From positions 186,001 to 250,000 of IMG/VR virus record IMGVR_UViG_3300034072_000926: a stretch of 64,000 nt of DNA; one strand, 5' to 3'. Both the position numbers and the translations under genes were made by a program. Under the pieces are notes generated by a model. It had not been told where the DNA came from. It did not search any database and saw only the letters and a program-made list of their open reading frames with translations. This document shows, piece after piece, positions 8,501-36,752 of the stretch. Numbering within the stretch: position 1 is the stretch's first letter; each line of letters starts with the position of its first letter.

Positions 8501-8785
8501 GGCGAAATTAAGAGCCAGGTTATCGCGGCAATGAGGAATTTCTTTGAAGTAAATAACTGGGATTTCGGTGAGACATTCTTCTTCTCTGAACTAGGTGCAT
8601 ATATTCATAGGCAATTGAGCACCGCTATTTCGAGTGTAGAAATCGTCCCCGTCCAGAATGATAGTTACTTTGGTAATTTGCGTGAAATTCGATGCGCTCC
8701 GGACGAACTGTTCTTCGTAACGGCCCAGGTCAATGACATCGACATTATCACCGCAAATACTCCAACGAATCTCAGGATTAGGTAA
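5573..8785 (+). CDS. Baseplate wedge protein, gp6-like
   Basis: 'DFSSIRQAMVDY...DWIESSEFVALIDLLAY...ENFLDTARRRESVLRLARSLSYNP', 'FGDGRFG', 'RMVSGADY'. Confidence 0.85.
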   Translation: MSQSQRQSELFAGNDWLAVYRAFTEVNLNAFDFSSIRQAMVDYIRRNYAEDFNDWIESSEFVALIDLLAYLGQSLAFRTDINARENFLDTARRRESVLRLARSLSYNPKRNYPARGLAKITEIRTTHDVYDSTGKNLNNIAIKWDDANNADWFEQWVLVLNASLIETNPFGVPLKTESLDGIETQLYRVDNVQNTPGNYPFTTNVNNQSYSFDVVNADFNTSFGFVEQTPNPISSYHMIYRSDGNGNSSPNTGFFVYFKQGTLQKSDYKISEPQENRMIYLDTSNVNETDVWVQSVDDLGSILSAGEWTRVGHVPSDDMVKVFLTTENITYNSVDVDVQNIYQVITQEEDRIALRFGDGRFGMSPVGNLRVWYRVSSNENLNVRPEDIQGVNINIPFYAKNNTQKRLSLTFSLQEAVNNGVSTETSTEIRRRASRVYSTQGRMVSGADYNELPVQTNLAVKLKAVNRVYSGQSRYIDLNDPTGSYQNTHVFADDGAFYLLSANESSEVNHTVANTDEMMNNFIQDAVSSIALKDFYHNYLYENLADADVVGITSYFSTEYLAKNEIRRQVRESLELNRTFALGFNNTTAADGWYVLASSEINPDLSASYAFDSTVAPGPNSWLVHVEYTSNFWRITTRGLSYVFESKQDCKFFFASEYRSIDPQTGKAGNDTVSLLRKPNNFSGIRLFNSVADKNSNIPLKCLKRDLMFKLEGMFVYPDGFNEPSRVKVRFNDMNGDGVADVPYSYKLIKNIDPERNTIVHQDTYSTDGYPVQKLVKRLELDEEDDNKIATTLLPGEFGYVELSDHTVKIYRGNSVNIVPTEADVCRNPSTGAAAILGRSLTSQQVLYPTGQSGSANFTVREGVNDLIFQWRHFAPSSHRIDPAISNIIDIFVLTREYNDAMISWRNAGADPLSQPKSPSELNLRTTFNPLEEFKMFSDEIIWRPVKFKLLFGQSAEAALQAKFKIVKLSGTSMSDGEIKSQVIAAMRNFFEVNNWDFGETFFFSELGAYIHRQLSTAISSVEIVPVQNDSYFGNLREIRCAPDELFFVTAQVNDIDIITANTPTNLRIR

Positions 8786-11700: not shown

Positions 11701-14700
11701 GCTAGCAGTCAGAATCTTGATCTTTCCGCCTCGATCCGTTTTGCTGATTCCGAATATAGCAGGTTCAAGGCTAAGTTCCAGCAGAAGATTGTCAGCTACG
11801 TCAATCAAAACCGTCTCACCAATGCTACTTCGTATGACACTTGGATCAACACAGCTCTTGAAGAGATCAACAAGGGTAAAACAAAGCTCTTCCCATTCTA
11901 CCTCAGTGGTATGGCAAAGAACGAGTCGAATCTATTGCCAACTTTCATTCCACCGACTCCTAGCTTCCTCGGCGTGCATCCCCTGTATGCCCCTGAGATT
12001 GTCTCTGACGAGGTCTCGGACGAGGATGGCAACACAGTCACTGTCTGGTATGTAAGGGGACATGACGGGTCTCTAACCCTGGGTGAGAACGAGATTAGCG
12101 CTCGTGTCTTGATGGCACTCGAGGAACGCATCTTCAACAGCATTCCTGCTTCGATCCGTATGCGCGAACGTCCTGTTTGTGATCCATTGCTTGCTTATGG
12201 TGACCAATTCCGTTCCGCTGATTACACCTATGACGAGTATCTTCAGATCCTTCGTCCTTCGTTTGAACGTTGGGCAATTGCAAATCGTCTAGATGTAAGG
12301 ACGAACGAATACTATGACAGTGATGACCTATGGACTTGGAATTGGTCTCAGATCCTAACCTCTGATGGTCAGAAGGTTCCAGGTCACTGGCGCGGGATCT
12401 ACGAGAAGTTCTTTGGAACTCAGCGTCCTGACATAATGCCTTGGGAAAGCCTTGGTTTCTCGATAAAGCCCGATTGGTGGGATGATCGCTACGGCAGTGC
12501 TCCTTACACAAGCGAGAACTTGGTTCTTTGGAATGACCTTGAGAATGGTTATATCCACAGCGGTCCACGTCAGGGCTTCAATGCTCACTTGGCTCGTCCA
12601 GGTCTATCACAGCATATCCCTGTTGACCTTCGTGGTCGTCTACGTCACCCAGGTCCACGCTGGAGGCCATCTGATACTGGTCCAAATCTAGACCAGTCTT
12701 GGACCGAAAGCCAGTATGTTGAATGGGAAGACACTAGCGCAGATGATGTGGTTCTAGGCTGTGGAATCTTGCCGACCCTTCCGCTAGTCTCTGATCGTAA
12801 GGCTGATTGGAACTATGGCGACATGGGCCCAACTGAACAGAACTGGAGGCGTTCAAGCACCTTCATGTTTGCCGCTGCTACTGCGAGCTATCTCATGAAG
12901 CCAGCTGCTTTCGTCGAACTTGGTTGGAATACTCAAGACATTGAACTGTTCTTTGCCGGTTCGGTCAATGAGCAGTGGATGAACCAGGATACAATGGGTC
13001 GCCCGAGCAACAGCGAACTACAAGTTCACGGCGAAGTCTTGGATGATCTCAGCCTTGTGACCAAGGTCGGTATTCAGCAGTGGGTTAGCGATTATTTGGC
13101 AAACCGCAATTCGGAGATTAATTCGAATCTAGCTGAAAAGGTTCGTGGTTTGGGATCGCAGCTCTCCTATAAGGTAGGTGGGTTCTCGGACGCAACGACT
13201 CTCATCACAGTTAGCGATGCATTTGGTCGTATTCCAAGCGAAGACGTCACGATCTCAAGCTACAGATCACCAAGCATCCGCGAGGAAACCTATAGCGGTC
13301 TAGCAATTGAGTATAAGTCGAATGGTTATGAGATTTACGGCTATGATACCCTGAATCCATATTTCTATACCATCCCTGCTGATAAGAACGGCAGCAAGAT
13401 CTCCGTTGGTAGCGGCATTAAGGCATCTAACCCTACTCCACTTTGGAGGGGCGCGACCTATTATACCGTGAACATCGTTGTGAAGCATGAGGACAACTTC
13501 TACCGCGCACTAAAGACCCACACAAGCTCTACGTTCTTCGAACCATCTTACTGGACTCAGGTATCTCGTCCGCAGTATGCAGACGGTGGCGCGCTTGTAT
13601 GGTATCTTGGTCAGCCAGTATCTCCGGTAATTGAGAAGGTTGCGTATGGCACTATCCTTAAGACTCCGCAGCAGGTCGCAGATTTTGTCAATGGCTACAA
13701 CCGCTACCTCGAGTCGAGGGGTTGGAAGTTTGACTCGTTGAATGATGATCAGGATGATATCCGCGATTGGAGGTCTGCACTTACAAGTTTCATCACTTGG
13801 AGCAGTCAGACTGATCGAGAGGAAGGCGACTTCCTCTCACTTAGCCCAAGTTCTAAGCTGATTCAGTATTCGACTGATCACGGCACTATTCAGCCGGTTG
13901 AACAGATCATCAATGGTCTCTACGCAATCGTGAACCAGAATGGTCAGCCAATTGATCCGAAGGATACTAGGGTCGTTCGTAACGATGGCAGCATCTCGAT
14001 CTACTGCGATTCGACAACTAGCGGTGTCTTCGGTCTGCGACTCTACGTGAGCGAGATTGAACATGTTCTTGTGTTCAACAATAAGACGATATTCGGCGAT
14101 ACCATTTATTCGCCGCTGCTCAACATCAAGCAGCCTCGTATCCGTCTTCAGGGCTTCAAGACTGTTGGTTGGAAGGGTCGTGTTGATGCACCTGGCTTCA
14201 TTGTAACTGGCGACACTTTGACTCCAAACTTCGAGCGTGCTGCGGATGACTTCCGTCGTTTCTTCGAAATTGAGTCGATGGAGAACAAGTCCCTACAGGA
14301 TCGCGCCCGTGCAAACTTCGGCTATGAGGAACGTGAATACCTCAACAATCTGCTCTTGACCTCAACTAACCAGTTTGAGTTCTATCAGGGTATGATTCAG
14401 CAGAAGGGTTCGCCAACCTCAATGCGTCGTCTCCTTCGCTCCAACTTCATTCGCCACAACAAGGGTTTGAAGCTGTTTGAGGAATGGGCATTCCGAGTTG
14501 GCGACTACGGCGGACAAGAAGTTACGCCGCAGCTGGATATCCAGATCCGTCAGAGCGAATTCAAGAACAACCCACAGTTGATCAAATTCACTAATGCTTC
14601 TGAGGCAAATACCTACGGTGTCATCAATGTCGTTGACACTAAGAATGCTGATGGCTCCTTGAATGATCTAGATGATCGTTGGAACTGGCGTCCAGATATC

Positions 14701-17700
14701 GCGGATATCAATTGGCCAACCAAGGACTTTGTTGCTAACGCGACCACTCCAGAAACTGCTGGCCCGGTCAACCTAGATGAAGTTCGCTTCACTGTTGCGA
14801 CCAATGAAGAGTTTGATGACTTTTATGGTTCGCTTTTGGATCAGGACGAAGTAATCAATGATCGTGACCGTGTTTGGGTGTATGGCATTGGTTCAGGTAG
14901 TGCATCGACTTCGTGGATGACCTACAAGTTCAATTCGACTGGCTTCAATATCGTCGATGTTGCTGCTCCTACCTTTGAGGGTCAGGGTTCGATTGTTCAG
15001 CTTGATAAGAATCTGAATGGCTTCGATGGATCTAATGATCCATGGACCAAACCATTCTATCTCAGCGCCGATATTGACCTGAATGAATATGACGACAATG
15101 GTTTTAGGATCTCGGGCGAGCGTCTTGTTCTCAAGAACATTGAGAACACTGATCTTAACCCACGCATGACCTACGTTCCAGCAACTAGAAATAAGGCAAA
15201 GGCTACACTTGAAACCACTGATCAGGCTGTTTTGATGGCATTCATGCCTCAAGCAGGACAAATGCTGAAGAGCATCACGGTCATTGTGGACGAAGCCTTC
15301 CCAAGTGATGCAACTCTTGAGATTGGTCATTCTGAAATTCATGACTTCTTCCTACCGGCTGATATGATTAATCTTTCGGTTACAGGAACTTACGAGATCA
15401 GCTCGCTCAATAACCCTAACTTCCCTTGGAACACTTCCTTGGCCGGCGGTGCTACCTATATGACAGCTGACTTGGTTTCGGCATCGACCTATGGTAGCCT
15501 GCGTATTGAAGTTGCCTATTATTACACCAAGGGCGTTGAGCTTTTGGAGAATCTCAATGGTAGTTTGGTTCCAAGCTTTGTCAATGTCGATGGCGGCACT
15601 GGTGAATTCTATACTTGGTTGAAGACTCGCTATCCAAACCTCGCCAGCGTTCCAACCACTGCTGGCATTTGGGACGATGGTGATATTGTTGAAGTAGACT
15701 CAGGTCCAGAAGATGGTCCAGATGATGGTCGTTGGTCAACTTATAAGATGATTGGAGGTTCTTGGACCGAGATTCGTCGTCAGAACCGCAAAATCAATAG
15801 CGATCTACTGACCAACGCGGCAATCTTCAACTCGACAGAAAACAAGCTCAAGTTGGTTCTTCAGCTCTACGATCCACTCAAGGGATTCATTCCTGGCACG
15901 GCTGATCGCGAACTGGAATACAAGACAAAGGCTGACCCTGCAATCTACAATGATGGTTTGATGGTGTGGGGCAAGGAACAAGTCGGCAAGCTGTGGTGGA
16001 ATCTGTCTACAACTCGTTACCTAGATTATGAGATCTATGATGATCTTTCCAATGGTGTGAACTATCGTTGGAAGAACTGGGGTCGTATTGCTCCTAATAC
16101 GAGCATTGACATTTATGAGTGGACTTGTAGTCCAGTGACTCCAAACTCCTGGTCGGCATATGTGGAGAGTAAGGCAAATCTGAAGATTGACAACAAGCCA
16201 TCGGGCGAAGTTGAAGAGACTGCACCATACATCATCGATGTTGAATGGAATGATGAAATTCAGGCTGAAGAAACTGTCTATTACTTCTGGGTTAAGAACC
16301 CAACTGTCGTTCCGGGCATTCCAAGCCGCAAGCTTTCTGCACGTCAGGTCAGCAATATCATCAGCAATCCAAGCGCACAGGACATTCCTTACTTCGCAGT
16401 CATCGATACCAATAAGGTTGTTGTTGGTGGTATCAGGCAGTTCCTAAACGAAACAGATACCGTGTTGAAGATCAAGTGGAACTTGGATGCAGACATTCAC
16501 AACAATCACCATAAGCAGTGGATGATTCTTCGTGAAGAGGACGAACGCAACACCATCAATGACGTTCTGTGGAACAAGATGCGTGACTCGGTTGTTGGCT
16601 GGGACGCAACGCAGGCGTATGTGCCGGACACTAAGCTACCAAAGGCCCAGCAGGTCGGTGCGCTAGTCCGTCCTCGCCAGTCTTGGTTCCCGACTGATGC
16701 AACTGCAACTGGCCAGCGTCCAAGCCGCGGTGCTCGCGAAGCATTCGTAGATGTCATGAATGACATCTTGTCGGCTGCTCCATTCACTGAGACTATGCCA
16801 AATTGGGAGAATGTATTTGCATCCGGCGAAGCATTGCCAACTGAAGACCGCTACATCACTACCGCTCTTGACTTGACCGACCTTGCCAACTTGCTACCTG
16901 CAAGCCGCAATATGGTTCAGCCAGGTGAATGTGTTCTCATTGAGAATACTGTTGATGCAGCTGGTTTCTGGACTCTCTGGAAGCTAGTTGAGATTTCGGG
17001 TCAGAGGACTTTCATCCTTGAAGACTTCCAAAAGTGGAGGATGCAAGAAGGTGAACTATGGAACCTAGCTGACTGGTATGCTGAGGATTGGTCTGCAAAG
17101 AACTTCCCTAACTATCGCTTCGCTACTGAGGATGATCGTAAGGCTGCTGGTAACCTCGACGTTACCCTGCTGAAGGGCACCTTGGTTCAGGTTGACCACA
17201 GTGATACCGCAAATCCACAGTGGACTTGGGATGTCTATACCTCGACAACCAAATATCAGGTCGCTAAGGCAAAGAGCACAATGAAGCTCAGCGATGCGTT
17301 CTATGATGCAAGCCGTGTCGAGTTTGGTCCTAGGGAAGTCTCTGCAATCCTCAATGCAAGCGAGGCAACTCGTATCACTCCGGCGAGGATTCAGGAACTA
17401 GCTGATCTGATCAACTATCGTGATGGTAGCCGTGAAATTGAATACATCCTGAACACTATTAAGTCGGATGTCTTTGATGTTCTACAGAAGAACAAGCTGT
17501 TCTTCGGTATGGTCAAGAGTGCGTTCAAGCAGAGCCAGGTCATCGACTGGGCATTTAAGACGTCCTTCCTCTACCTCGGCGGCTATTCGGAAACTCTACG
17601 TCAGAGCCCGGTGGCTTTCAAGGATCAGATTGACAACGTGATTGCATACTTGGAAGAGGTCAAGCCATACCACGTTAAGATTCGTGAATATGTGCGTCGC

Positions 17701-19335
17701 CTCTCTTATGGACCCGACGTTGCTGATTTGGCTATGACTGACTTTGATAAGCCAGTCTACCCAGACAGTGGTAGCTACCGAGTATTGAATCCAAACAATG
17801 CTGCGGATCAGAACATCCTAGGTCTAAACCGTCCTTGGAAGGATTGGTATGAAAACTTCCAGAAGCCAGTTCAGGAACTAGCTGATTGGAACCTAGAATG
17901 GAATGGCGTCCGTAAGATGAAGGTCAAGATGAAGTTTGACCGTATCGCTTGTGGAACTGTTTCGGGTTGGGATACTTTCCCTTGGGATCCAGCACTCTTG
18001 GTCTATAGCCAGATTGGTGGTGAGACTCAGAGCCTCAGCACTTTGAATGCTATGTATCGTAATAAGAATACTGGCGGCGATCCTGAGTTCTATCGTGACC
18101 AGACTGTAGAAACGATTGAGGATCGTAACTACTTGGTTCGTAAGGGTATCGTGACCGAGGATCGTTCGGGAACCATCGTAACTGTCCTAACAACTGGCGA
18201 ACACTTCATGTGGACCGGTGAGGCTTGGGCTAAGTTCGAGGCAATTGGTTGGGATCAGGGTCCAGACATGGGTGCAGTTACCCGTGTCGAGGAATCGTAT
18301 TATCCACTGCCTGGTATGACCCGTGCAGATGATGCAGGCTTGATTGCAGGATGTGACTTTGACGGCACTGTTATCTCGAGCAGCTTTGTCCAGGATGAAT
18401 GGGATATCTTCGAATGGGATTCTACTGGATATAGCCAGGGTATGCGTGAACATATCGGCGTTGATGTTGACAAGATTGACGGTAACACCACTGCCTCGGA
18501 TGAGAATGATCCTGCGAACATTAAAATCTCTGGTAATCAGTTTGCTCAGCCACATCGTGATTCCGGACGTCCGCACGAACTGGTAAGCATTCGTGGCATT
18601 GAGAGCATTGTGATCAACGTGACACAGAATGGTGTTCCATTGCGTAAGAGCTTCATGAACGCACAGAACAAGTGGCAGGACACTGTGATTGGAAACAGTG
18701 GTATCTCGTTTGTTGATTGGGATCAAATCAATAAGCAGGTAACGCTGACCGTTCCGGGTTGGAATGAAGATGGAAATGGATTCACGGCAATCCATGACCC
18801 TCAGAATCCATCTAATGGTTTCATCCGAGATATCATGTTGTCGAAGGGCTACAGGTCAACCAGCAATGTGGATATGACTTCTGCAGGTGTCAAGACCTTC
18901 AAGCTTCGTGACATGGCCGACATTGATAGCTTGCCAGCTGGTCTGATGGGCGACAATGTTAAGGTTGCAATCGTGAATACTAGGGATCCAAGCAAGCGCG
19001 CAATTGGTGTTCTCTCGAACAGTAAGGGTAACGAAGTTGGATCTTGGAATGGTTCGATCACGGTAGATTTCACCGATGGCTTCGTGGACATTGGTTCGGG
19101 TAAGAGTTGGAACATCATCCCTGTTGATATGTTCAACGAACCAGGTATCGTCTGGATCGACAATGCTCGTTTCACCTACACTGAAATCGAACGCACTGGT
19201 AATACGGCAATCCTCAAGAACGCAAGGCTATCGGCAAGCTCGCTAGAATGTCTGAATATTGCTGAGGATAATAGCGTGACTCTAAAGAGCACGGGTCCGG
19301 TTTTTGATGGTTCTAAACATCGTCAAAACGCCTAA
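8785..19335 (+). CDS. Very large (3516 aa) virion structural/baseplate protein
   Basis: Uninterrupted 10.5-kb ORF coupled to the gp6-like gene. 'YLEEVKPYHVKIRE' near the C-terminus. Internal CBM-like modules. Confidence 0.75.
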   Translation: MAKKNNRSPFAFTPIVLDQDSHEKRRIVKQLPAVHQTETLQKFFGATADHLFDPGKGRAINGYVGQKPLWYDPDQDYYLEENTSERTFYQLEASMVSKDTEGELSDLLPYPDLINQLRFQGALTNNHNRLFSQDYYTWCPPIDLDKIVNFRQYVWLPVAGLSPTSTFEDDQSDGWILEDGTPATIRGPWTGLSKYIGDFGGNPTGAQVVSKTFTLNSSATSAQIEFDFIKLNSWDSVPNMYQAPQAYGPESIFVHLNDEFAFSFTPVDIGGNGGASLGSGSFVVDGLTGTYNVTSPGADANLDTNNPDSQQFTDRVYRVTMTVLGTGATLKLGFGSNTDEPWQNESFGLDNIRLSQVSTAAVIVNGPTQTYKSQGNTSVYNLPGYGTGADAELQGLYDIDILTSGLIHAEVDGVSRPFTYVTGEDKITFAQRPAFDAEISISVYSDLENNAIGLPSTNVKAFGGTQLSSGMRIIVRLDKNSDFKNNQIYIVEGVGRSIFLIKEEDNGASDTPDYMVMERGSSDRNEWSTGNRWFHVDTLPESLDPDYVLRQRANRPIIEFNRGLELYNYGSTRRFDVDIVVENIEDLNGYMNQNPTSITLDGVTVVTRGTNMISMTAVDPTTGVTYGDRTSIRIMVRNTVNELLNNNILVLVNQGGILKLILETDGDNPSGQPIYGEVFKVKLGSYASKNLHWDGASWIVGQNKTKVNQAPLFELYDLNGNSLRDDGIYPNSTFKGSKLFNYKVDTTGTRVADAALGIALVHDNKGQIQFENFLHTEAYQYVVGGRFLDITGFYFHRSGEQFSNDWYKGPSRTRQFMIDRYVSDGRTKLFAFSQNAEELYVSLGRVNESKSFERTDLVEDTDYIRMGRQIMILNIKLGDVIEIRSFSSANPPVDATGHYEIPLNLQANPDNDEVTTLTKGDFYDHFSEIMKKQAGFDGAEYALNNYRDTAKAMNLGTHIIQHSAGLLKTMLLASSQNLDLSASIRFADSEYSRFKAKFQQKIVSYVNQNRLTNATSYDTWINTALEEINKGKTKLFPFYLSGMAKNESNLLPTFIPPTPSFLGVHPLYAPEIVSDEVSDEDGNTVTVWYVRGHDGSLTLGENEISARVLMALEERIFNSIPASIRMRERPVCDPLLAYGDQFRSADYTYDEYLQILRPSFERWAIANRLDVRTNEYYDSDDLWTWNWSQILTSDGQKVPGHWRGIYEKFFGTQRPDIMPWESLGFSIKPDWWDDRYGSAPYTSENLVLWNDLENGYIHSGPRQGFNAHLARPGLSQHIPVDLRGRLRHPGPRWRPSDTGPNLDQSWTESQYVEWEDTSADDVVLGCGILPTLPLVSDRKADWNYGDMGPTEQNWRRSSTFMFAAATASYLMKPAAFVELGWNTQDIELFFAGSVNEQWMNQDTMGRPSNSELQVHGEVLDDLSLVTKVGIQQWVSDYLANRNSEINSNLAEKVRGLGSQLSYKVGGFSDATTLITVSDAFGRIPSEDVTISSYRSPSIREETYSGLAIEYKSNGYEIYGYDTLNPYFYTIPADKNGSKISVGSGIKASNPTPLWRGATYYTVNIVVKHEDNFYRALKTHTSSTFFEPSYWTQVSRPQYADGGALVWYLGQPVSPVIEKVAYGTILKTPQQVADFVNGYNRYLESRGWKFDSLNDDQDDIRDWRSALTSFITWSSQTDREEGDFLSLSPSSKLIQYSTDHGTIQPVEQIINGLYAIVNQNGQPIDPKDTRVVRNDGSISIYCDSTTSGVFGLRLYVSEIEHVLVFNNKTIFGDTIYSPLLNIKQPRIRLQGFKTVGWKGRVDAPGFIVTGDTLTPNFERAADDFRRFFEIESMENKSLQDRARANFGYEEREYLNNLLLTSTNQFEFYQGMIQQKGSPTSMRRLLRSNFIRHNKGLKLFEEWAFRVGDYGGQEVTPQLDIQIRQSEFKNNPQLIKFTNASEANTYGVINVVDTKNADGSLNDLDDRWNWRPDIADINWPTKDFVANATTPETAGPVNLDEVRFTVATNEEFDDFYGSLLDQDEVINDRDRVWVYGIGSGSASTSWMTYKFNSTGFNIVDVAAPTFEGQGSIVQLDKNLNGFDGSNDPWTKPFYLSADIDLNEYDDNGFRISGERLVLKNIENTDLNPRMTYVPATRNKAKATLETTDQAVLMAFMPQAGQMLKSITVIVDEAFPSDATLEIGHSEIHDFFLPADMINLSVTGTYEISSLNNPNFPWNTSLAGGATYMTADLVSASTYGSLRIEVAYYYTKGVELLENLNGSLVPSFVNVDGGTGEFYTWLKTRYPNLASVPTTAGIWDDGDIVEVDSGPEDGPDDGRWSTYKMIGGSWTEIRRQNRKINSDLLTNAAIFNSTENKLKLVLQLYDPLKGFIPGTADRELEYKTKADPAIYNDGLMVWGKEQVGKLWWNLSTTRYLDYEIYDDLSNGVNYRWKNWGRIAPNTSIDIYEWTCSPVTPNSWSAYVESKANLKIDNKPSGEVEETAPYIIDVEWNDEIQAEETVYYFWVKNPTVVPGIPSRKLSARQVSNIISNPSAQDIPYFAVIDTNKVVVGGIRQFLNETDTVLKIKWNLDADIHNNHHKQWMILREEDERNTINDVLWNKMRDSVVGWDATQAYVPDTKLPKAQQVGALVRPRQSWFPTDATATGQRPSRGAREAFVDVMNDILSAAPFTETMPNWENVFASGEALPTEDRYITTALDLTDLANLLPASRNMVQPGECVLIENTVDAAGFWTLWKLVEISGQRTFILEDFQKWRMQEGELWNLADWYAEDWSAKNFPNYRFATEDDRKAAGNLDVTLLKGTLVQVDHSDTANPQWTWDVYTSTTKYQVAKAKSTMKLSDAFYDASRVEFGPREVSAILNASEATRITPARIQELADLINYRDGSREIEYILNTIKSDVFDVLQKNKLFFGMVKSAFKQSQVIDWAFKTSFLYLGGYSETLRQSPVAFKDQIDNVIAYLEEVKPYHVKIREYVRRLSYGPDVADLAMTDFDKPVYPDSGSYRVLNPNNAADQNILGLNRPWKDWYENFQKPVQELADWNLEWNGVRKMKVKMKFDRIACGTVSGWDTFPWDPALLVYSQIGGETQSLSTLNAMYRNKNTGGDPEFYRDQTVETIEDRNYLVRKGIVTEDRSGTIVTVLTTGEHFMWTGEAWAKFEAIGWDQGPDMGAVTRVEESYYPLPGMTRADDAGLIAGCDFDGTVISSSFVQDEWDIFEWDSTGYSQGMREHIGVDVDKIDGNTTASDENDPANIKISGNQFAQPHRDSGRPHELVSIRGIESIVINVTQNGVPLRKSFMNAQNKWQDTVIGNSGISFVDWDQINKQVTLTVPGWNEDGNGFTAIHDPQNPSNGFIRDIMLSKGYRSTSNVDMTSAGVKTFKLRDMADIDSLPAGLMGDNVKVAIVNTRDPSKRAIGVLSNSKGNEVGSWNGSITVDFTDGFVDIGSGKSWNIIPVDMFNEPGIVWIDNARFTYTEIERTGNTAILKNARLSASSLECLNIAEDNSVTLKSTGPVFDGSKHRQNA

Positions 19336-28490: not shown

Positions 28491-29762
28491 TTAATGACTC
28501 TTAAAGTTTTTTATGACGAGATTGTCACCTTCGAACAAAATATCAGCCGAAGTTAATCGACCTCCTTTGCCGCAACCAGTGTCCATGAAATAGGCTTCTC
28601 CGCCGCCAGTTCCCTTTACAACCAGTGGCTTAAAGGTGTCCCTGATATCATGGCCGACCATCACTCGTTTACCCTGGGGGATCCTATTCACCCATTCGTA
28701 GATGCGTGTAGGGTAACCATCTGCCCTCGGCGGTGCCGAATTGTCAACTTCGCCAAAGAGAGCCATAGTCTCAAAGCGACCATTCAATCTTGCACTCCTG
28801 ATGTCAAACATCTCAGGTTCTGCTGCACCGTGTGTGAACAAAGTGTCGCCGATAATCCAGTGATGTCTGGAGAATCCGAGAAGTGCCTTGTAGCGATTCT
28901 CGAACTTCTTCCTTGCTTCGCTACTAAGTGCCTCAATGGCCGCAGTGGTGACCTTGTTGCCATCACTGAGACGAAGACGAACATCGTTGAATCGAACCTG
29001 TTCGAGCCAGCGCTCAATCTTACGTTCGTGGTTACCAATGAGACATACGCCGCGACCTCGAGTCACAACGTCATAGACGTGGTCTACACACTCAAGGGAA
29101 TTTGGTCCATAGTCCACAACATCTCCTAGGAAGACACAGAAGAGATTTCTCTGACTTGCCCACTCGGTTGCATTCTTGAGAGGCTCCAACATGCCATGAA
29201 CATCGCCGACGACCATCACTCCTCGGAAGCCACGAAACTCGATGGCCTTTTTGAGGTCATGATTGTCTAGCTTGGGAATGACCTGGAAATCATCCTTCCT
29301 TGTGTCAATGACATTGGCGATTGAATCGCCCCTGAGAATGTCTCGCTCGTTAGTTCGGAAAATGTGCTCATGCTTTGTGATTGCACCTGATGCACCTGCA
29401 CGCCAGCTTCTATTGGAATTAGACAGCTTTATATCGAGATCACGATTGCAGACGACGTAGAAGATAGGAACGCCGACTTTTGTTCCAATATCAGCAAGAG
29501 TCAGACGATCCTTTTTGCGGAGATTGGTTGCATCAACGACCACGCGCTCGCCAAGCTCTAGCTTCAGCTGGGTGCGACGATGAATCTCACGGAATACAGT
29601 ATCGTTGGCATCAAGACGCTGGTAGTCGCCTGTCAGCTCATAACGAATGTCTTCGCTGCTCATAACCTCATAGGGAGCGAACTTGAGATTGGACCAATAG
29701 GTTTTGCCACCGCCTGCGGGGCCGACCATAATGACCAGGCTATGGAGTGGAATCTTTTTCAT
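28491..29762 (-). CDS. Polynucleotide kinase-phosphatase (P-loop kinase + metallophosphoesterase; Pnkp-like, no ligase domain)
   Basis: GPAGGGKT and VVDATN (kinase); GDVHG, GDVVDYG, GNHE, GHD, DTG (phosphoesterase). Confidence 0.85.
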   Translation of the reverse strand: MKKIPLHSLVIMVGPAGGGKTYWSNLKFAPYEVMSSEDIRYELTGDYQRLDANDTVFREIHRRTQLKLELGERVVVDATNLRKKDRLTLADIGTKVGVPIFYVVCNRDLDIKLSNSNRSWRAGASGAITKHEHIFRTNERDILRGDSIANVIDTRKDDFQVIPKLDNHDLKKAIEFRGFRGVMVVGDVHGMLEPLKNATEWASQRNLFCVFLGDVVDYGPNSLECVDHVYDVVTRGRGVCLIGNHERKIERWLEQVRFNDVRLRLSDGNKVTTAAIEALSSEARKKFENRYKALLGFSRHHWIIGDTLFTHGAAEPEMFDIRSARLNGRFETMALFGEVDNSAPPRADGYPTRIYEWVNRIPQGKRVMVGHDIRDTFKPLVVKGTGGGEAYFMDTGCGKGGRLTSADILFEGDNLVIKNFKSH

Positions 29763-31420: not shown

Positions 31421-31879
31421 TCACTCCACTGCGCTGAAACGCTTGGTGATCGCATGTGCCTGTTCGCGGGTGCAAGGGCCAATACCCAGGGCAGTCACGA
31501 TGGGCGAACCATCGAACTCGGTGCCGGGGATAATGTGGTTCTTGTCCACGATGAGGGAAGTGATCAGACCAGCAGCCTGGGCCTCTTCGTAAGCGCGCTG
31601 GATAGCGGCTTCGTTCTTGGCCTTGAGGATGACTTGGGTGCCGATGAAGTCCGGGCCCTGGTAAACACGCAGGAGTTCCGGTTCGCGCCGACTAGCGAGA
31701 AGCACACAATTCTTGGCCGCATGACAAGCCTGGCTTGCCAGCTTACCGGGCTTCATAGCCAGGTCGCCTCGAATGATGCTATAGATGCGAAGCTTTTCAG
31801 AGGCAGCTTCGAAGGCCTCGTCGTCATTATCCGCTTCGTAGCGAGCAATGGCTTCCTACAAGAACGAGTTCGTCAGCAT
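31421..31879 (-). CDS. pth2: Peptidyl-tRNA hydrolase type 2 (Pth2) with in-frame amber codon at codon 8 (31856-31858)
   Basis: 'IIRGDLAMKPGKLASQACHAA...VILKA...LIVD...TALGIGP' is Pth2. The ORF-track start (31756) truncates the conserved first strand. The in-frame ATG at 31879 follows the RBS AGAAAGGA and reads MLTNSFL*EAIARYE. Confidence 0.8.
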
Positions 31880-31919
31880 TTGCAGTCCTTTCTATTTGCG
31901 TCCAACATCGGACGTCCTC

Positions 31920-31947
31920 AACATAAGACACTTTTAGGATGTGTCAA
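31920..31947 (-). promoter_or_regulatory. Sigma70-like promoter of pth2
   Basis: TTGACA-N16-TATGTT. Confidence 0.55.
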
Positions 31948-33187: not shown

Positions 33188-33537
33188 GCACCAGTTTTAT
33201 TCTGTTCTGGAGCACCTGTCAACTTCTTAAAAGCTTCGACTTCCCTGTCGAGAATTTCGAGAGCAATAGGAATATCTGCGCCTGCAACTCGAATGTCGAA
33301 AAAGCCCCAATGACATTCATCGTCGCCGTCCGAATCGTAGCACTGATATTCAGTGCCGGTCTTCTCGTCGAGGAAATGGTTATCCAGAGAATACCAGAGA
33401 TCTTCATCAATAGCACCGACTGGAATTTTGATGCGACATGTGAGCTCGATGATAGGTTTCTCGGCATCATGCACGAAAATCCAATCGGTCGGGACAACCA
33501 GCTTAGAATCCCGAACCAAGATCGCAAAGATGCTCAT
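33184..33537 (-). CDS. Hypothetical acidic protein
   Basis: ORF with ATGA overlaps on both sides. Confidence 0.55.
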   Translation of the reverse strand: MSIFAILVRDSKLVVPTDWIFVHDAEKPIIELTCRIKIPVGAIDEDLWYSLDNHFLDEKTGTEYQCYDSDGDDECHWGFFDIRVAGADIPIALEILDREVEAFKKLTGAPEQNKTGA

Positions 33538-34334
33538 TCGTCACTGCCATTTGCGTGACGAGTGACATGCAGAGCGTTATCGGCCTGATACTTCTCGACC
33601 TGCTGCCAATTGTAGATGCAGCGATCCAGACCGATGGCAATCTCGAGCACAAGTGCGTCCTTCTCAACAAGACCTTTCTTGCTCTGGAACTTCAGCTTCT
33701 CAGGGAAATCAGTTCGCAGGCTGATGCTGCAAACTTCCATCCACTTGTCACCGTTCCAGACTTCAACGTCCATCGTCTTCAGCGAATAGGCCGGCAGACG
33801 ATCCGACTCAACAAGACGGGTCGGTAAATGAACCATAGAGGCGATCATCTTCCGAACGGGTTCGAGGATCGCAGCATGATAGTCGTTCGCTGTGTCTGCA
33901 CTGTAGATGCACTGGAACTCTTGCTGGTAGAACTCCTTAAGGCGCATGTGCTTGGTCGGCTGCACGATTTCCCGACGGAAGCTCTTACCCGCCTGCCAAA
34001 CCACAAAGGGCGGGGAAACGCCAAGATGGTTGTTGAGCAGGTATTGCGCGTAGGCATAGCTACCGGGAGTGGTTTCGGGTCGCAGCGTCAACGGCGCTTC
34101 GCCGGACATGGCCGGGACCTGCTGATCCCATACATCCTCAGATGTGTAGTTGACATTGAGTAGATCACGCGGAGTGAGTAACGGGGCCTCGACGAAATGG
34201 AACTTCCACTGCGGGTTCAAGGCCAGCAATGCGTTTTGAATGGTCCGAGCAAAATAGTCCCGGAAGGTTTCGCGAAGGCGGATCTCTTCCTCATTCCAGA
34301 AGACCAGACCATTGATGTTATAGGGATTCTGCAT
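33534..34334 (-). CDS. Class II aminoacyl-tRNA synthetase catalytic domain, GlyRS (alpha2-type)-like, lacking an anticodon-binding domain
   Basis: LRPETT, QAGKSFRRE (motif 2), RLKEFYQQEFQ, PAYS..TMDVE, WMEVCSISLRTDF, VLEIAIGLDR (motif 3). The protein ends about 25 aa after motif 3. Likely start MQNPYN at 34334. Confidence 0.75.
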   Translation of the reverse strand: MQNPYNINGLVFWNEEEIRLRETFRDYFARTIQNALLALNPQWKFHFVEAPLLTPRDLLNVNYTSEDVWDQQVPAMSGEAPLTLRPETTPGSYAYAQYLLNNHLGVSPPFVVWQAGKSFRREIVQPTKHMRLKEFYQQEFQCIYSADTANDYHAAILEPVRKMIASMVHLPTRLVESDRLPAYSLKTMDVEVWNGDKWMEVCSISLRTDFPEKLKFQSKKGLVEKDALVLEIAIGLDRCIYNWQQVEKYQADNALHVTRHANGSDE

Positions 34335-34342
34335 AATGGGCC

Positions 34343-34852
34343 TTACTGGTTGAGAATGAAGATGAAGGAAACAACTGCCATCATAACACCGCCCCAGAAG
34401 AATGGGCTCTTCAGCAGCGCGGGCTTGATATCTGGGATAGCGATGGGTTCTGGTTCCGGCCTCGGTTCCCGAACATTTCTGAGCCCGAGGAAGGCTTGCC
34501 ATTCCCATTCCGAAGAAGGCCGGTCATTGTTGTTCGTACTAGCCGCACCAGCATAGCCGATATACAGGCCTTCGCTGGCCGCCCATGTCCTCAGCTCTTC
34601 CCATACGGGCTGATATGCAGATTTCTCATCTTCCATATCCCATCGAGAACCATAGCAGGGCATTTCGAAGAGATGCCGGATAGCCTTTGGGGCAGTCACT
34701 GGCGCATATTCACTGCCGTGCTTTACTGCCTCTTGTAGGGCTTCGAGCAAGGTGGACTTTACGAAGAACCGAAGGAGGTCTGCATTCTCCTTCAGTTCAT
34801 TATGGATGGCTTCGCGCTTGGTCTTGCGAAGATCATCTGCGAGCGTTGCCAT
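34343..34852 (-). CDS. Hypothetical protein with C-terminal transmembrane anchor
   Basis: Hydrophobic C-terminal 'PFFWGGVMMAVVSFIFIL'. Confidence 0.6.
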   Translation of the reverse strand: MATLADDLRKTKREAIHNELKENADLLRFFVKSTLLEALQEAVKHGSEYAPVTAPKAIRHLFEMPCYGSRWDMEDEKSAYQPVWEELRTWAASEGLYIGYAGAASTNNNDRPSSEWEWQAFLGLRNVREPRPEPEPIAIPDIKPALLKSPFFWGGVMMAVVSFIFILNQ

Positions 34853-36171
34853 TAGTCTTCAATCCTCAAGTGATCTGCCTTGTATTCAGCTTCGAAGACA
34901 TCCTTATAGGTTTTGATGATTAGAATCAATACCGCAGGATACAGGAAGGTGGACAGAAGGACATTGCCGACCACAATAGCCTCGAAGAGTTCCAGGTATT
35001 CAAAGTCCCTGGGAATCATATGCAACATGAGCAGCGAGAACGCACCCTTCACACCGGCAGCAGTCAATACCTTCCACCAATGCAGCGGGATGGTCACAAC
35101 TTTATCAGTCCGCTGACTCATCCAAGCAAACCCGCCCAACATGACCATTCGAATGATCGTCGAACCTACGAATACTGCCATGATCTCGCCCCAATACTTC
35201 ACAAGCAACTGGAGATTGATCAGATTAGCCATCGTAATGAACAAGACCGTCGAGGCAATGATTGCAATGAACTGGATGTTACCGATGACGACTTGATAGG
35301 CATAGGAATCCTTGATCATGTTGTCGAAACGAGGAATGATCTTCCCAATGGTCCGACCACGTTCGCCAGTGTCCTCAACAGCATTCTCGAGTTCACTCGA
35401 TAGTCGCTTGGTGATGATATTGTTGGCGAAGAGGATCGCAACGATAACAGCAAAGATGCCAGAAGCATGATAGTGTTCAGCAATCGCGAACGCGCCTAGG
35501 GCCATGAGCAGGACAATCATCGTCTCAGTCATTGCATCGTGGATATAACGCAGAGCAATAAGACCCACGTAACCAACGACCAGACCAATGCCAAGTGCGC
35601 CGACGACCATCTTGACCGCGTAGAGGGTGGGGTTATCCGCTACATGCTCGGGGCCATGACCCATATAGACTAGCGCGATACTGAATACAATCAGGGCACT
35701 TGCGTCGTTGAACAAACTCTCACCCTCTGCGAGGACTTTGAGATTGTGAGGCAAATGCGACCGACCGAACACCGCAGAGACCGAAACTGGATCCGTTGCA
35801 AGGATCATACAGAACAATGCTGCGACCGCCGGGGCCGTCAGATGGTAGTCAGGTAGAATGTGTCGATTGACCATGATTGCAAGGCCGACCGAAAGGACGA
35901 TCATAATGCCTGCAATGTAGAACAAGCTTAGGGCATTGCGCTTGAGCTCATCCCAGCGGAGCATCATAGCGTCAACGCATATCAGGATGGGAAGCATGAG
36001 GAAGACCAGATGGTCAAATGTTTGATCACTAATCTCGATGGGACGATGCCCGGAAAGTGAAACCAGAACCACCGAGGCGATAATTGTTATCGGGGTGGGA
36101 ACGCCTAGCTTTTGCTGGACGAAAAGAGCCGTAGCGGCTATGAGCACAACAAAGATAGCTAGTTCTAGCAT
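34852..36171 (-). CDS. CPA1-family Na+(K+)/H+ antiporter (NhaP-like)
   Basis: Many hydrophobic helices; ATDPVSV and EGESLFNDA motifs. Confidence 0.9.
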   Translation of the reverse strand: MLELAIFVVLIAATALFVQQKLGVPTPITIIASVVLVSLSGHRPIEISDQTFDHLVFLMLPILICVDAMMLRWDELKRNALSLFYIAGIMIVLSVGLAIMVNRHILPDYHLTAPAVAALFCMILATDPVSVSAVFGRSHLPHNLKVLAEGESLFNDASALIVFSIALVYMGHGPEHVADNPTLYAVKMVVGALGIGLVVGYVGLIALRYIHDAMTETMIVLLMALGAFAIAEHYHASGIFAVIVAILFANNIITKRLSSELENAVEDTGERGRTIGKIIPRFDNMIKDSYAYQVVIGNIQFIAIIASTVLFITMANLINLQLLVKYWGEIMAVFVGSTIIRMVMLGGFAWMSQRTDKVVTIPLHWWKVLTAAGVKGAFSLLMLHMIPRDFEYLELFEAIVVGNVLLSTFLYPAVLILIIKTYKDVFEAEYKADHLRIED

Positions 36172-36209
36172 CTACTTTCCTATTCTGTTTGACCTCATAA
36201 AATGTTGAG

Positions 36210-36282
36210 CGCGCCTAGCGAGGCTCGAACTCGCGACCCGCGGATTTAGAGTCCGCTGCTCTACCAACTGAGCTATAAGCGC
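36210..36282 (-). tRNA. Amber-suppressor tRNA (anticodon CUA), tRNA-Gly-like body, no encoded CCA
   Basis: Minus strand GCGCTTA-TA-GCTC-AGTTGGTA-GAGC-A-GCGGA-CTCTAAA-TCCGC-GGGTC-GCGAG-TTCGAGC-CTCGC-TAGGCGC-G gives a complete cloverleaf with a 7-nt loop CT-CTA-AA. Confidence 0.92.
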
Positions 36283-36293
36283 ATGTAACCTTT

Positions 36294-36752
36294 TTAGGAC
36301 TTATTCTCCAGCCTGTCAAGACGTTCCATGATTTCTCGGAGAAGTTCTACCTGCTCCCTGGATTGATTCTTGAGAAGTTCCTGTTCCTCGTGCGTGAATG
36401 CATCGCTGTTGACGATCAGATGTGCGGCAAACTTAGCCGTGATGATCGGTGCGATGATAAAGGTGCAAACGTGCATGAACACGCCTGCAAGAAACTTGCT
36501 CCAGGGATGCGTGGGAAACATATCCCCGTATCCAACAGTGGTCGCTGTCACGGTCGCCCACCAAAAGCTGTCAGTGATGTCCTTGCCTTCGATGAAGCTG
36601 AACATAAGAGCAGCTATGGTCATGATCAGGCCATATGCAATTGCAAGGCTTATGACCCGATTGAACAGTTTCTGCATCAGCGTCAATTCTTGACCAGCCC
36701 CGGCTGCGGCGGTCCACAAATCACTACCGGCTTGTTCGATCTTTCTACGCAT
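36294..36752 (-). CDS. Two-TM potassium channel (KcsA-like)
   Basis: Selectivity filter TATTVGYGD flanked by two TM helices. Confidence 0.9.
   Translation of the reverse strand: MRRKIEQAGSDLWTAAAGAGQELTLMQKLFNRVISLAIAYGLIMTIAALMFSFIEGKDITDSFWWATVTATTVGYGDMFPTHPWSKFLAGVFMHVCTFIIAPIITAKFAAHLIVNSDAFTHEEQELLKNQSREQVELLREIMERLDRLENKS

What the first reader, a model, noticed from the sequence alone, without database searches (positions are those of the whole stretch)
31421..31879. Pth2 gene with an in-frame amber at codon 8
Seen on the minus strand: RBS AGAAAGGA, then ATG CTG ACG AAC TCG TTC TTG TAG GAA GCC..., in frame with KLRIYSIIRGDLAMKPGK. No ATG, GTG or TTG lies between the TAG and the conserved first beta-strand. 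Starting at 31756 would delete residues needed for the Pth2 fold. Without read-through the mRNA yields a 7-aa minigene product, and minigenes are known to drain tRNA as peptidyl-tRNA, the very substrate of Pth. Inference: a feedback sensor reminiscent of prfB autoregulation, making Pth2 only when UAG termination is inefficient or suppressed.
Basis: partly seen in the sequence, partly recalled or inferred. Interest (0 to 1): 0.85.

Follow-up and report, generated by a model that had tools for sequence, protein, structure and literature searches.

The report
Suppressor-tRNA-gated phage Pth2 gene
A jumbo-phage gene for the tRNA-recycling enzyme Pth2 starts with a deliberate stop codon that the phage's own stop-reading tRNA, encoded nearby, appears to read through; the pairing is conserved in dozens of phages and gives a first clear target for their puzzling suppressor tRNAs.

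Summary
On the minus strand the order is SD GAAAGGA, ATG (31879), six sense codons, TAG (31858-31856), then 33 codons without ATG/GTG/TTG running into a complete Pth2 domain. The in-frame stop is conserved in every relative: 56 loci, 51 distinct architectures, always at codon 2-10. Its identity tracks the suppressor tRNA encoded beside it: TAG/CUA in 38 loci, TGA/UCA in 2 plus Atu_ph07, TAA/UUA in 1, with no mismatch. That makes three independent switches on the tree. Codons on both sides of the TAG evolve as one reading frame (pN/pS 0.10 and 0.24). The base after the gate stop is a purine in 94% and never T. Neither the window nor the complete relative Phosso shows genome-wide recoding, and Pth2 is the only gene interrupted this way. 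Best reading: Pth2 is made only by read-through of an early stop by the phage's own suppressor tRNA. The purpose of the coupling is inferred, not shown. No paper in the searched library describes this module, and the XacN1 authors explicitly failed to find targets for such tRNAs.

The parts
31920..31947 (-). Sigma-70-like promoter TTGACA-16 nt-TATGTT directly upstream of the Pth2 leader
   Evidence: 10 of 12 consensus positions. The -35 TTGAC is invariant and the -10 is conserved in 11 close relatives.
31900..31913 (-). Small hairpin (GTCC-gatgtt-GGAC) at the predicted 5' end of the mRNA
   Evidence: It occurs exactly only once in the 64-kb window. It is conserved, with 3 pairs showing compensatory changes, in the relatives. 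Its function is unknown.
31886..31892 (-). Shine-Dalgarno GAAAGGA, 6 nt before the ATG
   Evidence: An SD-like purine run precedes the short ORF in most relatives.
31859..31879 (-). Seven sense codons MLTNSFL: the true N-terminus of the read-through protein
   Evidence: pN/pS is 0.10 over codons 2-7 across 13 relatives, with synonymous TTG/CTG variation at the codon before the stop.
31856..31858 (-). In-frame amber codon TAG (codon 8), followed by G: the gate
   Evidence: It is invariant in 13 close relatives at pS of about 0.5. A stop at codon 2-10 is present in 56 loci of the subfamily. The following base is G in 31, A in 20, C in 3 and T in 0.
31796..31855 (-). 20-codon linker between the stop and beta1, with no ATG/GTG/TTG; the model shows two helices
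   Evidence: pN/pS is 0.24 in this frame against 1.1-1.3 in the other two frames. Helices at residues 2-9 and 12-20, pLDDT 61-76. The motif F-E-x-A-S is conserved in the clade.
31421..31795 (-). Pth2 catalytic domain (KLRIY... to the TGA stop at 31421-31423)
   Evidence: PF01981 E=7e-20. NCBIfam Pth2. Sequence match to PDB 1q7s and 2zv3. Fold match TM 0.77-0.85. The GK lysine and the Asp at residue 104 are conserved.
36209..36282 (-). Amber-suppressor tRNA, anticodon CUA, loop CU-CUA-AA, discriminator G73, no encoded CCA
   Evidence: ARAGORN. Rfam tRNA 69.9 bits. Orthologues keep the anticodon loop while their stems change by compensatory substitutions. It lies on the same strand, 2.3-4.9 kb upstream of Pth2, in the whole clade.
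33537..34334 (-). Truncated GlyRS-like class II aminoacyl-tRNA-synthetase core with no anticodon-binding domain. It may charge the suppressor, and its membership of the system is uncertain
   Evidence: PF00587. Best PDB and NCBIfam matches are glycine-tRNA ligase, core only. It lies directly downstream of the tRNA-CUA in 13 loci and is absent from Atu_ph07.

Best explanation
The gene encodes a complete Pth2 peptidyl-tRNA hydrolase whose translation starts at ATG 31879 and must pass an in-frame UAG at codon 8. The phage's own amber-suppressor tRNA (anticodon CUA, 36209-36282) decodes that UAG in competition with release factor 1. Pth2 output is therefore set by the amount of matured, charged suppressor tRNA; without it only a heptapeptide is released. 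This suppressor tRNA plus stop-gated Pth2 is a conserved, usually physically linked module of a large phage Pth2 subfamily. Shown here: the conserved stop, a single reading frame across it, the cognate tRNA, and co-variation of stop and anticodon. Inferred: that read-through actually occurs, that it is partial, and what it is for. My preferred purpose is a feed-forward link that supplies extra peptidyl-tRNA hydrolase in proportion to suppressor activity. Such activity should increase ribosome run-through and stalling, and so peptidyl-tRNA release. A checkpoint confirming that the phage's tRNA supply line is working is also possible.
For: (1) SD, ATG, 6 codons, TAG, then 33 codons without a canonical start into a full Pth2 domain. 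(2) tRNA-CUA on the same strand 4.3 kb upstream, a good tRNA by Rfam, with compensatory stem changes in orthologues. (3) Every member of the window clade (22 distinct sequences, down to 59% identity) has the early stop. In L146 and L150 the internal Met used by annotators is Leu, so an internal start is impossible there. (4) pN/pS is 0.10 before the TAG and 0.24 after it, against 1.1-1.3 out of frame. (5) Loci fetched only by a tRNA-CUA pattern turned out to have stop-gated Pth2 genes next to the tRNA. (6) A survey of 60 loci found 56 gated, with stop type equal to the anticodon of the flanking same-strand suppressor in all 41 loci that have one (TAG/CUA 38, TGA/UCA 2, TAA/UUA 1); Atu_ph07 has TGA and its only suppressor is UCA. 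(7) These represent three independent stop switches on the tree; L194 (UUA) and its sister L191 (CUA) are visibly the same tRNA. (8) Gate stops are followed by a purine in 94% and never by T, against T after 36% of real terminators. (9) The gate is gene-specific: no other interrupted gene in the window or in the complete 469-kb Phosso genome, and no TAG-specific ORF gain in any locus. (10) Outgroup Pth2 genes (XacN1, RsoM2USA, phiM19, Xoo-sp13 and others) have ordinary ATG starts 3-6 residues before beta1.
Against: There is no direct evidence for the read-through protein, for expression or charging of the tRNA, or for which amino acid is inserted. Similarity to other tRNAs gives no parent isoacceptor. 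Phosso still ends about 31 genes in TAG, with no enrichment of backup stops, so suppression cannot be near-complete. Fifteen gated loci show no suppressor within the fetched flanks; most are short contigs, and in L016 the tRNA lies 270 kb away. Seven of the 56 gated loci have a canonical start codon between the stop and beta1 that could serve instead. The purpose of coupling Pth2 to suppression is inference only.
Confidence: 0.85

Rival explanations
1. One reading: an autoregulatory sensor. The 7-codon minigene releases peptidyl-tRNA, and Pth2 is made when UAG termination is inefficient. This would give prfB-like feedback on Pth or release-factor activity without a dedicated tRNA.
For: The stop always lies within the first 10 codons, which from general knowledge is where short peptidyl-tRNAs drop off most readily. 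The product is the enzyme that clears such species. SD plus a short ORF plus a stop has the form of a minigene.
Against: The stop type co-varies with the adjacent suppressor anticodon in three independent switches, which a sensor of RF1 or Pth activity does not predict. Pth2 does not act on stop codons. No route by which low Pth activity would raise read-through is apparent. The last sense codon is not conserved between clades.
Confidence: 0.07
2. The short ORF is a separate upstream ORF, and Pth2 is translated independently by re-initiation or from a non-canonical start (ATT, ATC, CTG) after the stop.
For: Near-cognate codons exist after the stop in the window (ATT at the third codon). Seven loci have a canonical start between the stop and beta1. 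L161 and L164 have GTG immediately after the TGA.
Against: The short ORF is in frame with Pth2 in 56 loci although its length varies from 2 to 9 codons and the linker from 1 to 39 residues. The ATT is not conserved, being GCT in close relatives. The six codons before the stop are under purifying selection. Matching of stop type and anticodon is unexplained by this model. Three loci have two in-frame stops.
Confidence: 0.04
3. The phage uses an alternative genetic code (TAG reassigned genome-wide, as in code-15 phages), and Pth2 is just one of many genes containing TAG.
For: A suppressor tRNA is present. TAG is the rarest terminator, at 3 of 71 genes in the window and 32 of 557 in Phosso.
Against: No other gene in the window or in the whole Phosso genome is interrupted by TAG. 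About 31 Phosso genes, including CysRS, end in TAG. Treating TAG as sense never extends ORFs more than the TGA or TAA controls do. The stop is always at codon 2-10 and never inside the domain. A TAG share of about 6% of terminators is ordinary for bacteria and phages (general knowledge).
Confidence: 0.02
4. The gene is a nonsense-mutated pseudogene or carries an assembly error.
For: It is a single stop codon in a metagenome-derived contig.
Against: The stop is conserved across 56 loci from independent assemblies and two cultured phages. There is purifying selection on both sides of it, and the domain is intact with its catalytic Lys and Asp.
Confidence: 0.01

Closest known systems
Stop-codon recoding in phages with suppressor tRNAs (TAG or TGA reassignment in crAss-like, Lak and other phages; e.g. 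bioRxiv 10.1101/2021.08.26.457843, PMC9523058, PMC13037316)
   Same: A phage-encoded suppressor tRNA decodes in-frame stop codons in phage genes while the host uses the standard code. It is proposed as a regulator of expression.
   Different: There, many (mostly late) genes carry many in-frame stops and the stop largely ceases to terminate. Here one gene carries one stop (rarely two), always in its first 10 codons. The same stop still ends about 31 genes in Phosso, and the tRNA is usually adjacent to its single target.
prfB (RF2) autoregulatory recoding
   Same: An early in-frame stop in a translation-factor gene makes product synthesis depend on competition at that stop.
   Different: prfB uses a +1 frameshift, and its product recognises the very stop codon, which closes a feedback loop. 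Here the stop is in frame in the window, decoding is by a dedicated tRNA, and Pth2 has no known action on stop codons.
Programmed read-through genes (e.g. the Qbeta A1 read-through protein; retroviral gag-pol UAG)
   Same: Partial read-through of one specific stop yields the functional or extended product. The 3' context favours read-through.
   Different: Those use host near-cognate tRNAs and extend a protein at its C-terminus. Here a virus-encoded cognate suppressor is used, and the stop precedes the whole functional domain, so it acts as an on/off gate.
Lambda bar minigenes and Pth
   Same: A short SD-ATG-few-codons-stop unit, with a functional link to peptidyl-tRNA hydrolase.
   Different: bar minigenes are toxic to Pth-deficient hosts and are not fused in frame to any gene. 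Here the mini-ORF continues, in frame, into Pth2 itself.
Synthetic suppressor-tRNA feed-forward gate (PMC7969014)
   Same: A target gene carries an early amber codon and is expressed only when a co-encoded suppressor tRNA is present.
   Different: That is an engineered E. coli circuit. The present case would be a natural, evolutionarily conserved counterpart.
Pth2 family (PF01981; archaeal and eukaryotic-type peptidyl-tRNA hydrolase, e.g. PDB 2zv3, 1q7s, 1xty)
   Same: Domain, fold and conserved Lys/Asp.
   Different: Ordinary members, including the phage ones in XacN1, RsoM2USA, phiM19 and Phosso gp55, start 3-6 residues before beta1. This subfamily has an N-terminal extension containing the gate.

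Membership tests
Pth2 peptidyl-tRNA hydrolase (PF01981) | Sequence match to the family profile above the curated cut-off | tested here: met
   71.8 bits against a cut-off of 23, E=7e-20. The NCBIfam Pth2 models match at E=5e-17 but below their equivalog cut-offs.
Pth2 peptidyl-tRNA hydrolase (PF01981) | Pth2 alpha/beta fold including the N-terminal beta-strand | tested here: met
   Model pLDDT 85.3 with beta1 at residues 23-29. Foldseek probability 1.0 and TM 0.77-0.85 to 2zv3, 1wn2, 1q7s, 1xty.
Pth2 peptidyl-tRNA hydrolase (PF01981) | Conserved active-site Lys (GK motif) and Asp (residue identities recalled from the S. solfataricus work, not re-derived here) | tested here: met
   K38 is nearly invariant (Arg in one sequence) and D104 is invariant in 19 sequences. 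The Asp is invariant also in the divergent set.
Pth2 peptidyl-tRNA hydrolase (PF01981) | Hydrolysis of peptidyl-tRNA | not testable with these tools
   Needs an enzyme assay.
Suppressor-tRNA-dependent programmed read-through | In-frame stop conserved among homologues, with protein-level constraint on both sides in one frame | tested here: met
   56 loci. pN/pS 0.10 and 0.24 against 1.1-1.3 out of frame.
Suppressor-tRNA-dependent programmed read-through | A cognate suppressor tRNA available in the same genome | tested here: met
   Window tRNA-CUA. 41 loci have a cognate tRNA in the flanks. Atu_ph07 has UCA. L016's contig has CUA.
Suppressor-tRNA-dependent programmed read-through | Co-variation of stop identity and anticodon | tested here: met
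   Three independent switches and no mismatch.
Suppressor-tRNA-dependent programmed read-through | Detection of the read-through polypeptide and the inserted residue | not testable with these tools
   Needs proteomics or a reporter assay.
Genome-wide stop-codon reassignment (code 15 / code 4 phages) | Many genes interrupted by the reassigned stop, which is no longer used as a terminator | tested here: not met
   Only Pth2 is interrupted in the window and in Phosso. There are 31 TAG terminators in Phosso. No TAG-specific ORF gain.
prfB-type autoregulatory recoding | The gene product acts on its own recoding site; +1 frameshift with an upstream SD-like stimulator | tested here: not met
   The stop is in frame in the window. 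The product is a hydrolase of peptidyl-tRNA, not a release factor.
Pyrrolysine system (the label 'tRNA-Pyl' given by ARAGORN and by published annotations) | tRNA-Pyl architecture (short D-loop, 3-nt variable loop, long anticodon stem) together with PylRS and pylBCD | tested here: not met
   The tRNA is a canonical cloverleaf with G18G19 and a 5-nt variable loop. The neighbouring synthetase-like protein matches GlyRS, and no PylRS chain was matched at E<=0.01. The label reflects the CUA anticodon only.
bar-like minigene | Short SD-ATG-stop unit whose expression sequesters tRNA as peptidyl-tRNA | tested here: inconclusive
   The form is met. The sequestration effect is not testable, and in-frame continuation into Pth2 is not a minigene feature.

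The most novel reading that the evidence does not exclude
The suppressor tRNA and the stop-gated Pth2 form a self-contained, near-orthogonal translational circuit that is the main reason standard-code jumbo phages carry 'orphan' suppressor tRNAs. In the window's clade the tRNA would be charged by the truncated GlyRS-like enzyme encoded beside it. Pth2 made through suppression would feed back on the consequences of suppression, or on the suppressor pool itself, to hold read-through at a set point. Evolution has rewired the gate to all three stops, to double stops, and possibly to four-base decoding (L183: a tRNA with an 8-nt loop CC-UCUA-AU next to a Pth2 that needs a +1 shift exactly at UAGA).
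Probability: 0.2. Interest if true: 0.93.

Novelty: new variant of a known kind. Interest (0 to 1): 0.88.

Why it matters
Many large phages that use the standard genetic code carry suppressor tRNAs whose targets are unknown. The XacN1 authors read through all amber stops in silico and found no target (PMC5852040). The Atu_ph07 and AP-J-162 papers list the tRNA without a target. This finding supplies a specific, conserved and testable target, and shows that recoding can be used surgically on one gene rather than genome-wide. It would be a natural counterpart of the engineered amber-codon gate. It links stop-codon suppression to peptidyl-tRNA recycling, a connection nobody has proposed for phages, and it corrects the annotated start of this gene in published genomes (Phosso gp267, Atu_ph07 AUZ95035). 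Two cultured phages with tractable hosts, Phosso on Sinorhizobium meliloti and Atu_ph07 on Agrobacterium C58, make it directly testable.

Tried and rejected
- **Crude ORF lengthening** and **six-frame coverage** with each stop treated as sense are weak metrics. They only show the absence of a TAG-specific effect.
- **Parent of the suppressors:** comparison with all 62 Phosso tRNAs gave no clear parent isoacceptor. My impressions of Trp-like or Gly-like origin, from memory of E. coli tRNAs and from mixed BLAST hits, are not supported, because acceptor stems vary freely between orthologues.
- **Own promoter for the tRNA:** rejected. The TTGAC upstream of it is the coding 3' end of the preceding gene.
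- **Backup-stop test** for genome-wide adaptation to suppression: negative.
- **Small hairpin around the TAG** (4 bp): too weak to interpret.
- **Structure job:** I did not resend that sequence and ran the job without it.
- **Relatives of L183**, to test the four-base-decoding idea: none found.
- **L162, L183 and L196** were left out of the counts as ambiguous, because the short ORF is out of frame. **L229** (no stop) sits on a branch of 5.8 substitutions per site and is barely a member.
- **Pyrrolysine reading** of the 'tRNA-Pyl' label: rejected.

Full report
**1. The observation.** On the minus strand the window reads SD GAAAGGA (31892-31886), ATG (31879), CTG ACG AAC TCG TTC TTG, TAG (31858-31856), then an open frame that runs without any ATG, GTG or TTG for 33 codons to the ATG at 31756 and on to a TGA at 31421. 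The product downstream of the TAG is a Pth2 peptidyl-tRNA hydrolase. Pfam PF01981 matches at E=7e-20, covering profile positions 3-113 of 115 from residue 24 of the post-stop piece, whereas the ORF from 31756 begins only at profile position 13. Solved Pth2 proteins start 2-4 residues before the segment IYSIIRGDL. An AlphaFold model (pLDDT 85.3) places beta-strand 1 at residues 23-29 and superposes on solved Pth2 structures with TM 0.77-0.85.

ARAGORN finds a single tRNA in the window, at 36209-36282 on the same strand, with anticodon CUA. It scores 69.9 bits against Rfam tRNA and has an ordinary cloverleaf. The label 'tRNA-Pyl' reflects only the anticodon. It is an amber suppressor 4.3 kb upstream of the amber-interrupted gene.

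**3. The genome is not recoded.**
- Of 71 rough gene calls in the window, 41 end in TAA, 27 in TGA and 3 in TAG.
- Pth2 is the only gene with a long, coding-like stretch between an in-frame stop and its first start codon.
- The window comes from a 465-kb IMG/VR contig related to the jumbo phages Sinorhizobium phage Phosso and Agrobacterium phage Atu_ph07.
- I fetched the whole 469-kb Phosso genome. About 32 of 557 rough genes end in TAG, including real ones such as CysRS. A genome-wide scan found only Pth2 as a clean TAG-interrupted gene.
- TAG-terminated genes have no excess of backup stops.

Suppression is therefore gene-specific in its use and probably partial.

**4. Conservation in the window's clade.**
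- Phosso reads AGGAG, ATG AAG TAT TAG, and is in frame with KLRIYSII. Atu_ph07 reads GAAAGG, ATG ATT GGC GAA CAC TTT TGA, also in frame. Both are annotated from the internal ATG.
- Viral and metagenome scans added further relatives, giving 22 distinct sequences down to 59% identity. Every one has SD, ATG, 2-8 sense codons and an in-frame stop, and none has a canonical start before beta1.
- In L146 and L150 the internal Met is Leu, so the annotated type of start is impossible there.
- Across 13 close relatives, synonymous sites are about 50% diverged while the TAG is invariant. pN/pS is 0.10 for the six codons before the TAG, 0.24 for the 20 codons after it and 0.14 for the domain, against 1.1-1.3 for the linker in the other two frames.

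Both sides of the stop are translated in one frame.

**5. Co-variation with the suppressor.**
- All close relatives carry a tRNA-CUA 2.3-4.9 kb upstream on the same strand. Its stems change by compensatory substitutions while the anticodon loop stays fixed.
- Atu_ph07 has TGA in Pth2. Its only suppressor tRNA has anticodon UCA, according to the published description (PMC6102473), and I confirmed this with ARAGORN.

**6. The module is widespread.** A DNA-pattern search for tRNA-CUA genes returned 108 viral contigs. Four distant ones (Pth2 40-51% identical) have a Pth2 with an early in-frame TAG within 70 nt to 2.5 kb of the tRNA. A wider protein-based scan followed by a systematic classification gave these results:
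- 60 loci of one Pth2 subfamily were examined (beta1 of the RLYAIVRGDL type); 56 are gated, in 51 distinct architectures.
- The first stop is at codon 2-10.
- Forty-nine of the 56 have no canonical start between the stop and beta1.
- Wherever a suppressor tRNA lies in the flanks (41 loci), it is on the same strand and cognate: TAG/CUA in 38, TGA/UCA in 2 (L161, L164), TAA/UUA in 1 (L194).
- Three loci have two in-frame TAGs, and L194 has two TAAs.
- Pth2 genes of the KQVIVVRKDLNMRKGK type, including XacN1, RsoM2USA, phiM19, Xoo-sp13 and Phosso gp55, have ordinary starts even when a suppressor tRNA is nearby.

On a maximum-likelihood tree the three non-TAG cases fall in three separate places: Atu_ph07 inside the window clade, L161+L164 elsewhere, and L194 as sister to a TAG/CUA clade. 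That means three independent switches, each matched by the anticodon. L194's tRNA-UUA is visibly the same tRNA as its sister's tRNA-CUA. No locus shows a TAG-specific gain in ORF coverage.

**7. Context of the gate.** The base after the gate stop is G in 31 cases, A in 20, C in 3 and T in 0. T follows 36% of real terminators in Phosso (Fisher p=2e-10, not corrected for shared ancestry). From classical E. coli genetics (my knowledge, not tested here), a 3' purine favours tRNA suppression. In the window clade the gene has its own conserved sigma-70-like promoter (31947-31920) and a small conserved 5' hairpin (31913-31900) that occurs only here in the window.

**8. Mechanism.**
- Shown: a conserved early stop, one reading frame across it, a cognate suppressor tRNA, and co-variation.
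- Inferred: ribosomes start at 31879 and reach UAG at codon 8. Either RF1 releases a heptapeptide or the phage suppressor inserts an amino acid and the full Pth2 is made. Output is thus proportional to active suppressor tRNA.
- Not derivable from sequence: the purpose of tying Pth2 to suppression. I favour a feed-forward link that supplies extra peptidyl-tRNA hydrolase in step with suppressor activity, because read-through of host and phage terminators should increase ribosome stalling and peptidyl-tRNA release. A checkpoint on the phage's tRNA maturation and charging, or a homeostat acting on the suppressor itself, remain open.
- Context: the neighbourhood is tRNA-centred, with a truncated GlyRS-like synthetase core directly after the tRNA in 13 loci and a Pnkp-like RNA-repair enzyme 1.7 kb downstream of Pth2. 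Phosso also carries an ordinary, ungated Pth2 (gp55), so the gated copy is a specialised extra.

**9. Rivals.** The prfB-like or minigene feedback does not predict the stop/anticodon matching and lacks a feedback path. Re-initiation or a non-canonical start does not explain frame conservation, selection on the upstream codons, double stops or the matching. Genome-wide recoding and error or pseudogene are contradicted.

**10. Comparison and novelty.** The nearest known kind is phage stop-codon recoding by suppressor tRNAs. That affects many genes and effectively changes the code, whereas this is a one-gene gate with its tRNA alongside. Full-text searches found no paper linking a phage Pth to a suppressor tRNA. 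The XacN1 paper states that targets of its suppressor tRNAs could not be identified, and the Atu_ph07 and AP-J-162 papers list the tRNA without a target. I rate it a new variant of a known kind, of high interest, with direct tests available in two cultured phages.

Noticed in passing
window 33537-34334 (-): A truncated GlyRS-like class II aminoacyl-tRNA-synthetase core (266 aa, no anticodon-binding domain). It lies directly downstream of the tRNA-CUA in 13 loci of the clade, is absent from Atu_ph07, and has homologues in Caulobacter, Brevundimonas and Xanthomonas jumbo phages. It is a candidate charging enzyme for the suppressor.
   Followed up: partly
L183:9779-9852 and L183:~9985-9998; L162:~9960-9972: L183 has a tRNA with a 4-bp anticodon stem and an 8-nt loop, CC-UCUA-AU. 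The adjacent Pth2 is reached from its short ORF only by a +1 shift exactly at ATG TTG TAG A (UAGA). L162 needs +1 at CAG TAG G. This is either natural four-base decoding or assembly indels. No relatives were found to decide between them.
   Followed up: partly
L192, L195, L201 (two TAG each); L194 (two TAA): Some members carry two in-frame stops of the same type before beta1, for example MNT-TAG-IDSPT-TAG-VDTTLRLY. This would make the response to suppressor level steeper.
   Followed up: partly
L201:9856-9940: The 3' CCA of the tRNA-CUA ends 8 nt before the Pth2 ATG, with no Shine-Dalgarno. tRNA processing would leave a nearly leaderless Pth2 mRNA.
   Followed up: no
window 28491-29762 (-): A Pnkp-like polynucleotide kinase-phosphatase (AAA_33 plus metallophosphatase; NCBIfam bacter_Pnkp, N-terminal half), an RNA/tRNA-repair enzyme. 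It lies 1.7 kb downstream of Pth2 and is syntenic in Phosso and Atu_ph07.
   Followed up: partly
window 34852-36171 (-) and 36294-36752 (-): A Na+/H+ exchanger family protein (439 aa) and a K+-channel-like protein (152 aa) flank the suppressor tRNA. These are unusual cargo for a phage, and the exchanger is inserted between the tRNA and the GlyRS-like gene only in this genome.
   Followed up: no
Phosso genome (L128-L137); AP-J-162 (PMC11242549): Phosso has 62 tRNAs, including two different tRNA-CUA genes (171,983 with G73; 446,731 with A73), but no tRNA-Tyr. The AP-J-162 paper reports the same combination.
   Followed up: partly
L001:6040 (Phosso gp267), L002:6040 (Atu_ph07 AUZ95035), L154:485 (Xoo-sp13_273): The published annotations start these Pth2 genes too far downstream. 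The first two start at the internal ATG because of the gate. Xoo-sp13 is a plain mis-call, with its true ATG 31 codons upstream.
   Followed up: yes
window 31900-31913 (-): A conserved 5' hairpin (GTCC-gatgtt-GGAC) lies between the promoter and the SD of Pth2. It is unique in the window, shows compensatory changes in relatives, and its function is unknown.
   Followed up: partly
L176:~9860-9945: A tRNA-like sequence with acceptor and T arms and a loop UU-CUA-AA closed by a C-A mismatch ends about 45 nt before the SD of a TAG-gated Pth2. ARAGORN does not call it, so suppressors may be under-counted.
   Followed up: partly
window 8785-19335 (+): A 3516-aa ORF. A very large protein (about 4555 aa, gp294) is annotated as a virion structural protein in Phosso. 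It was not examined.
   Followed up: no
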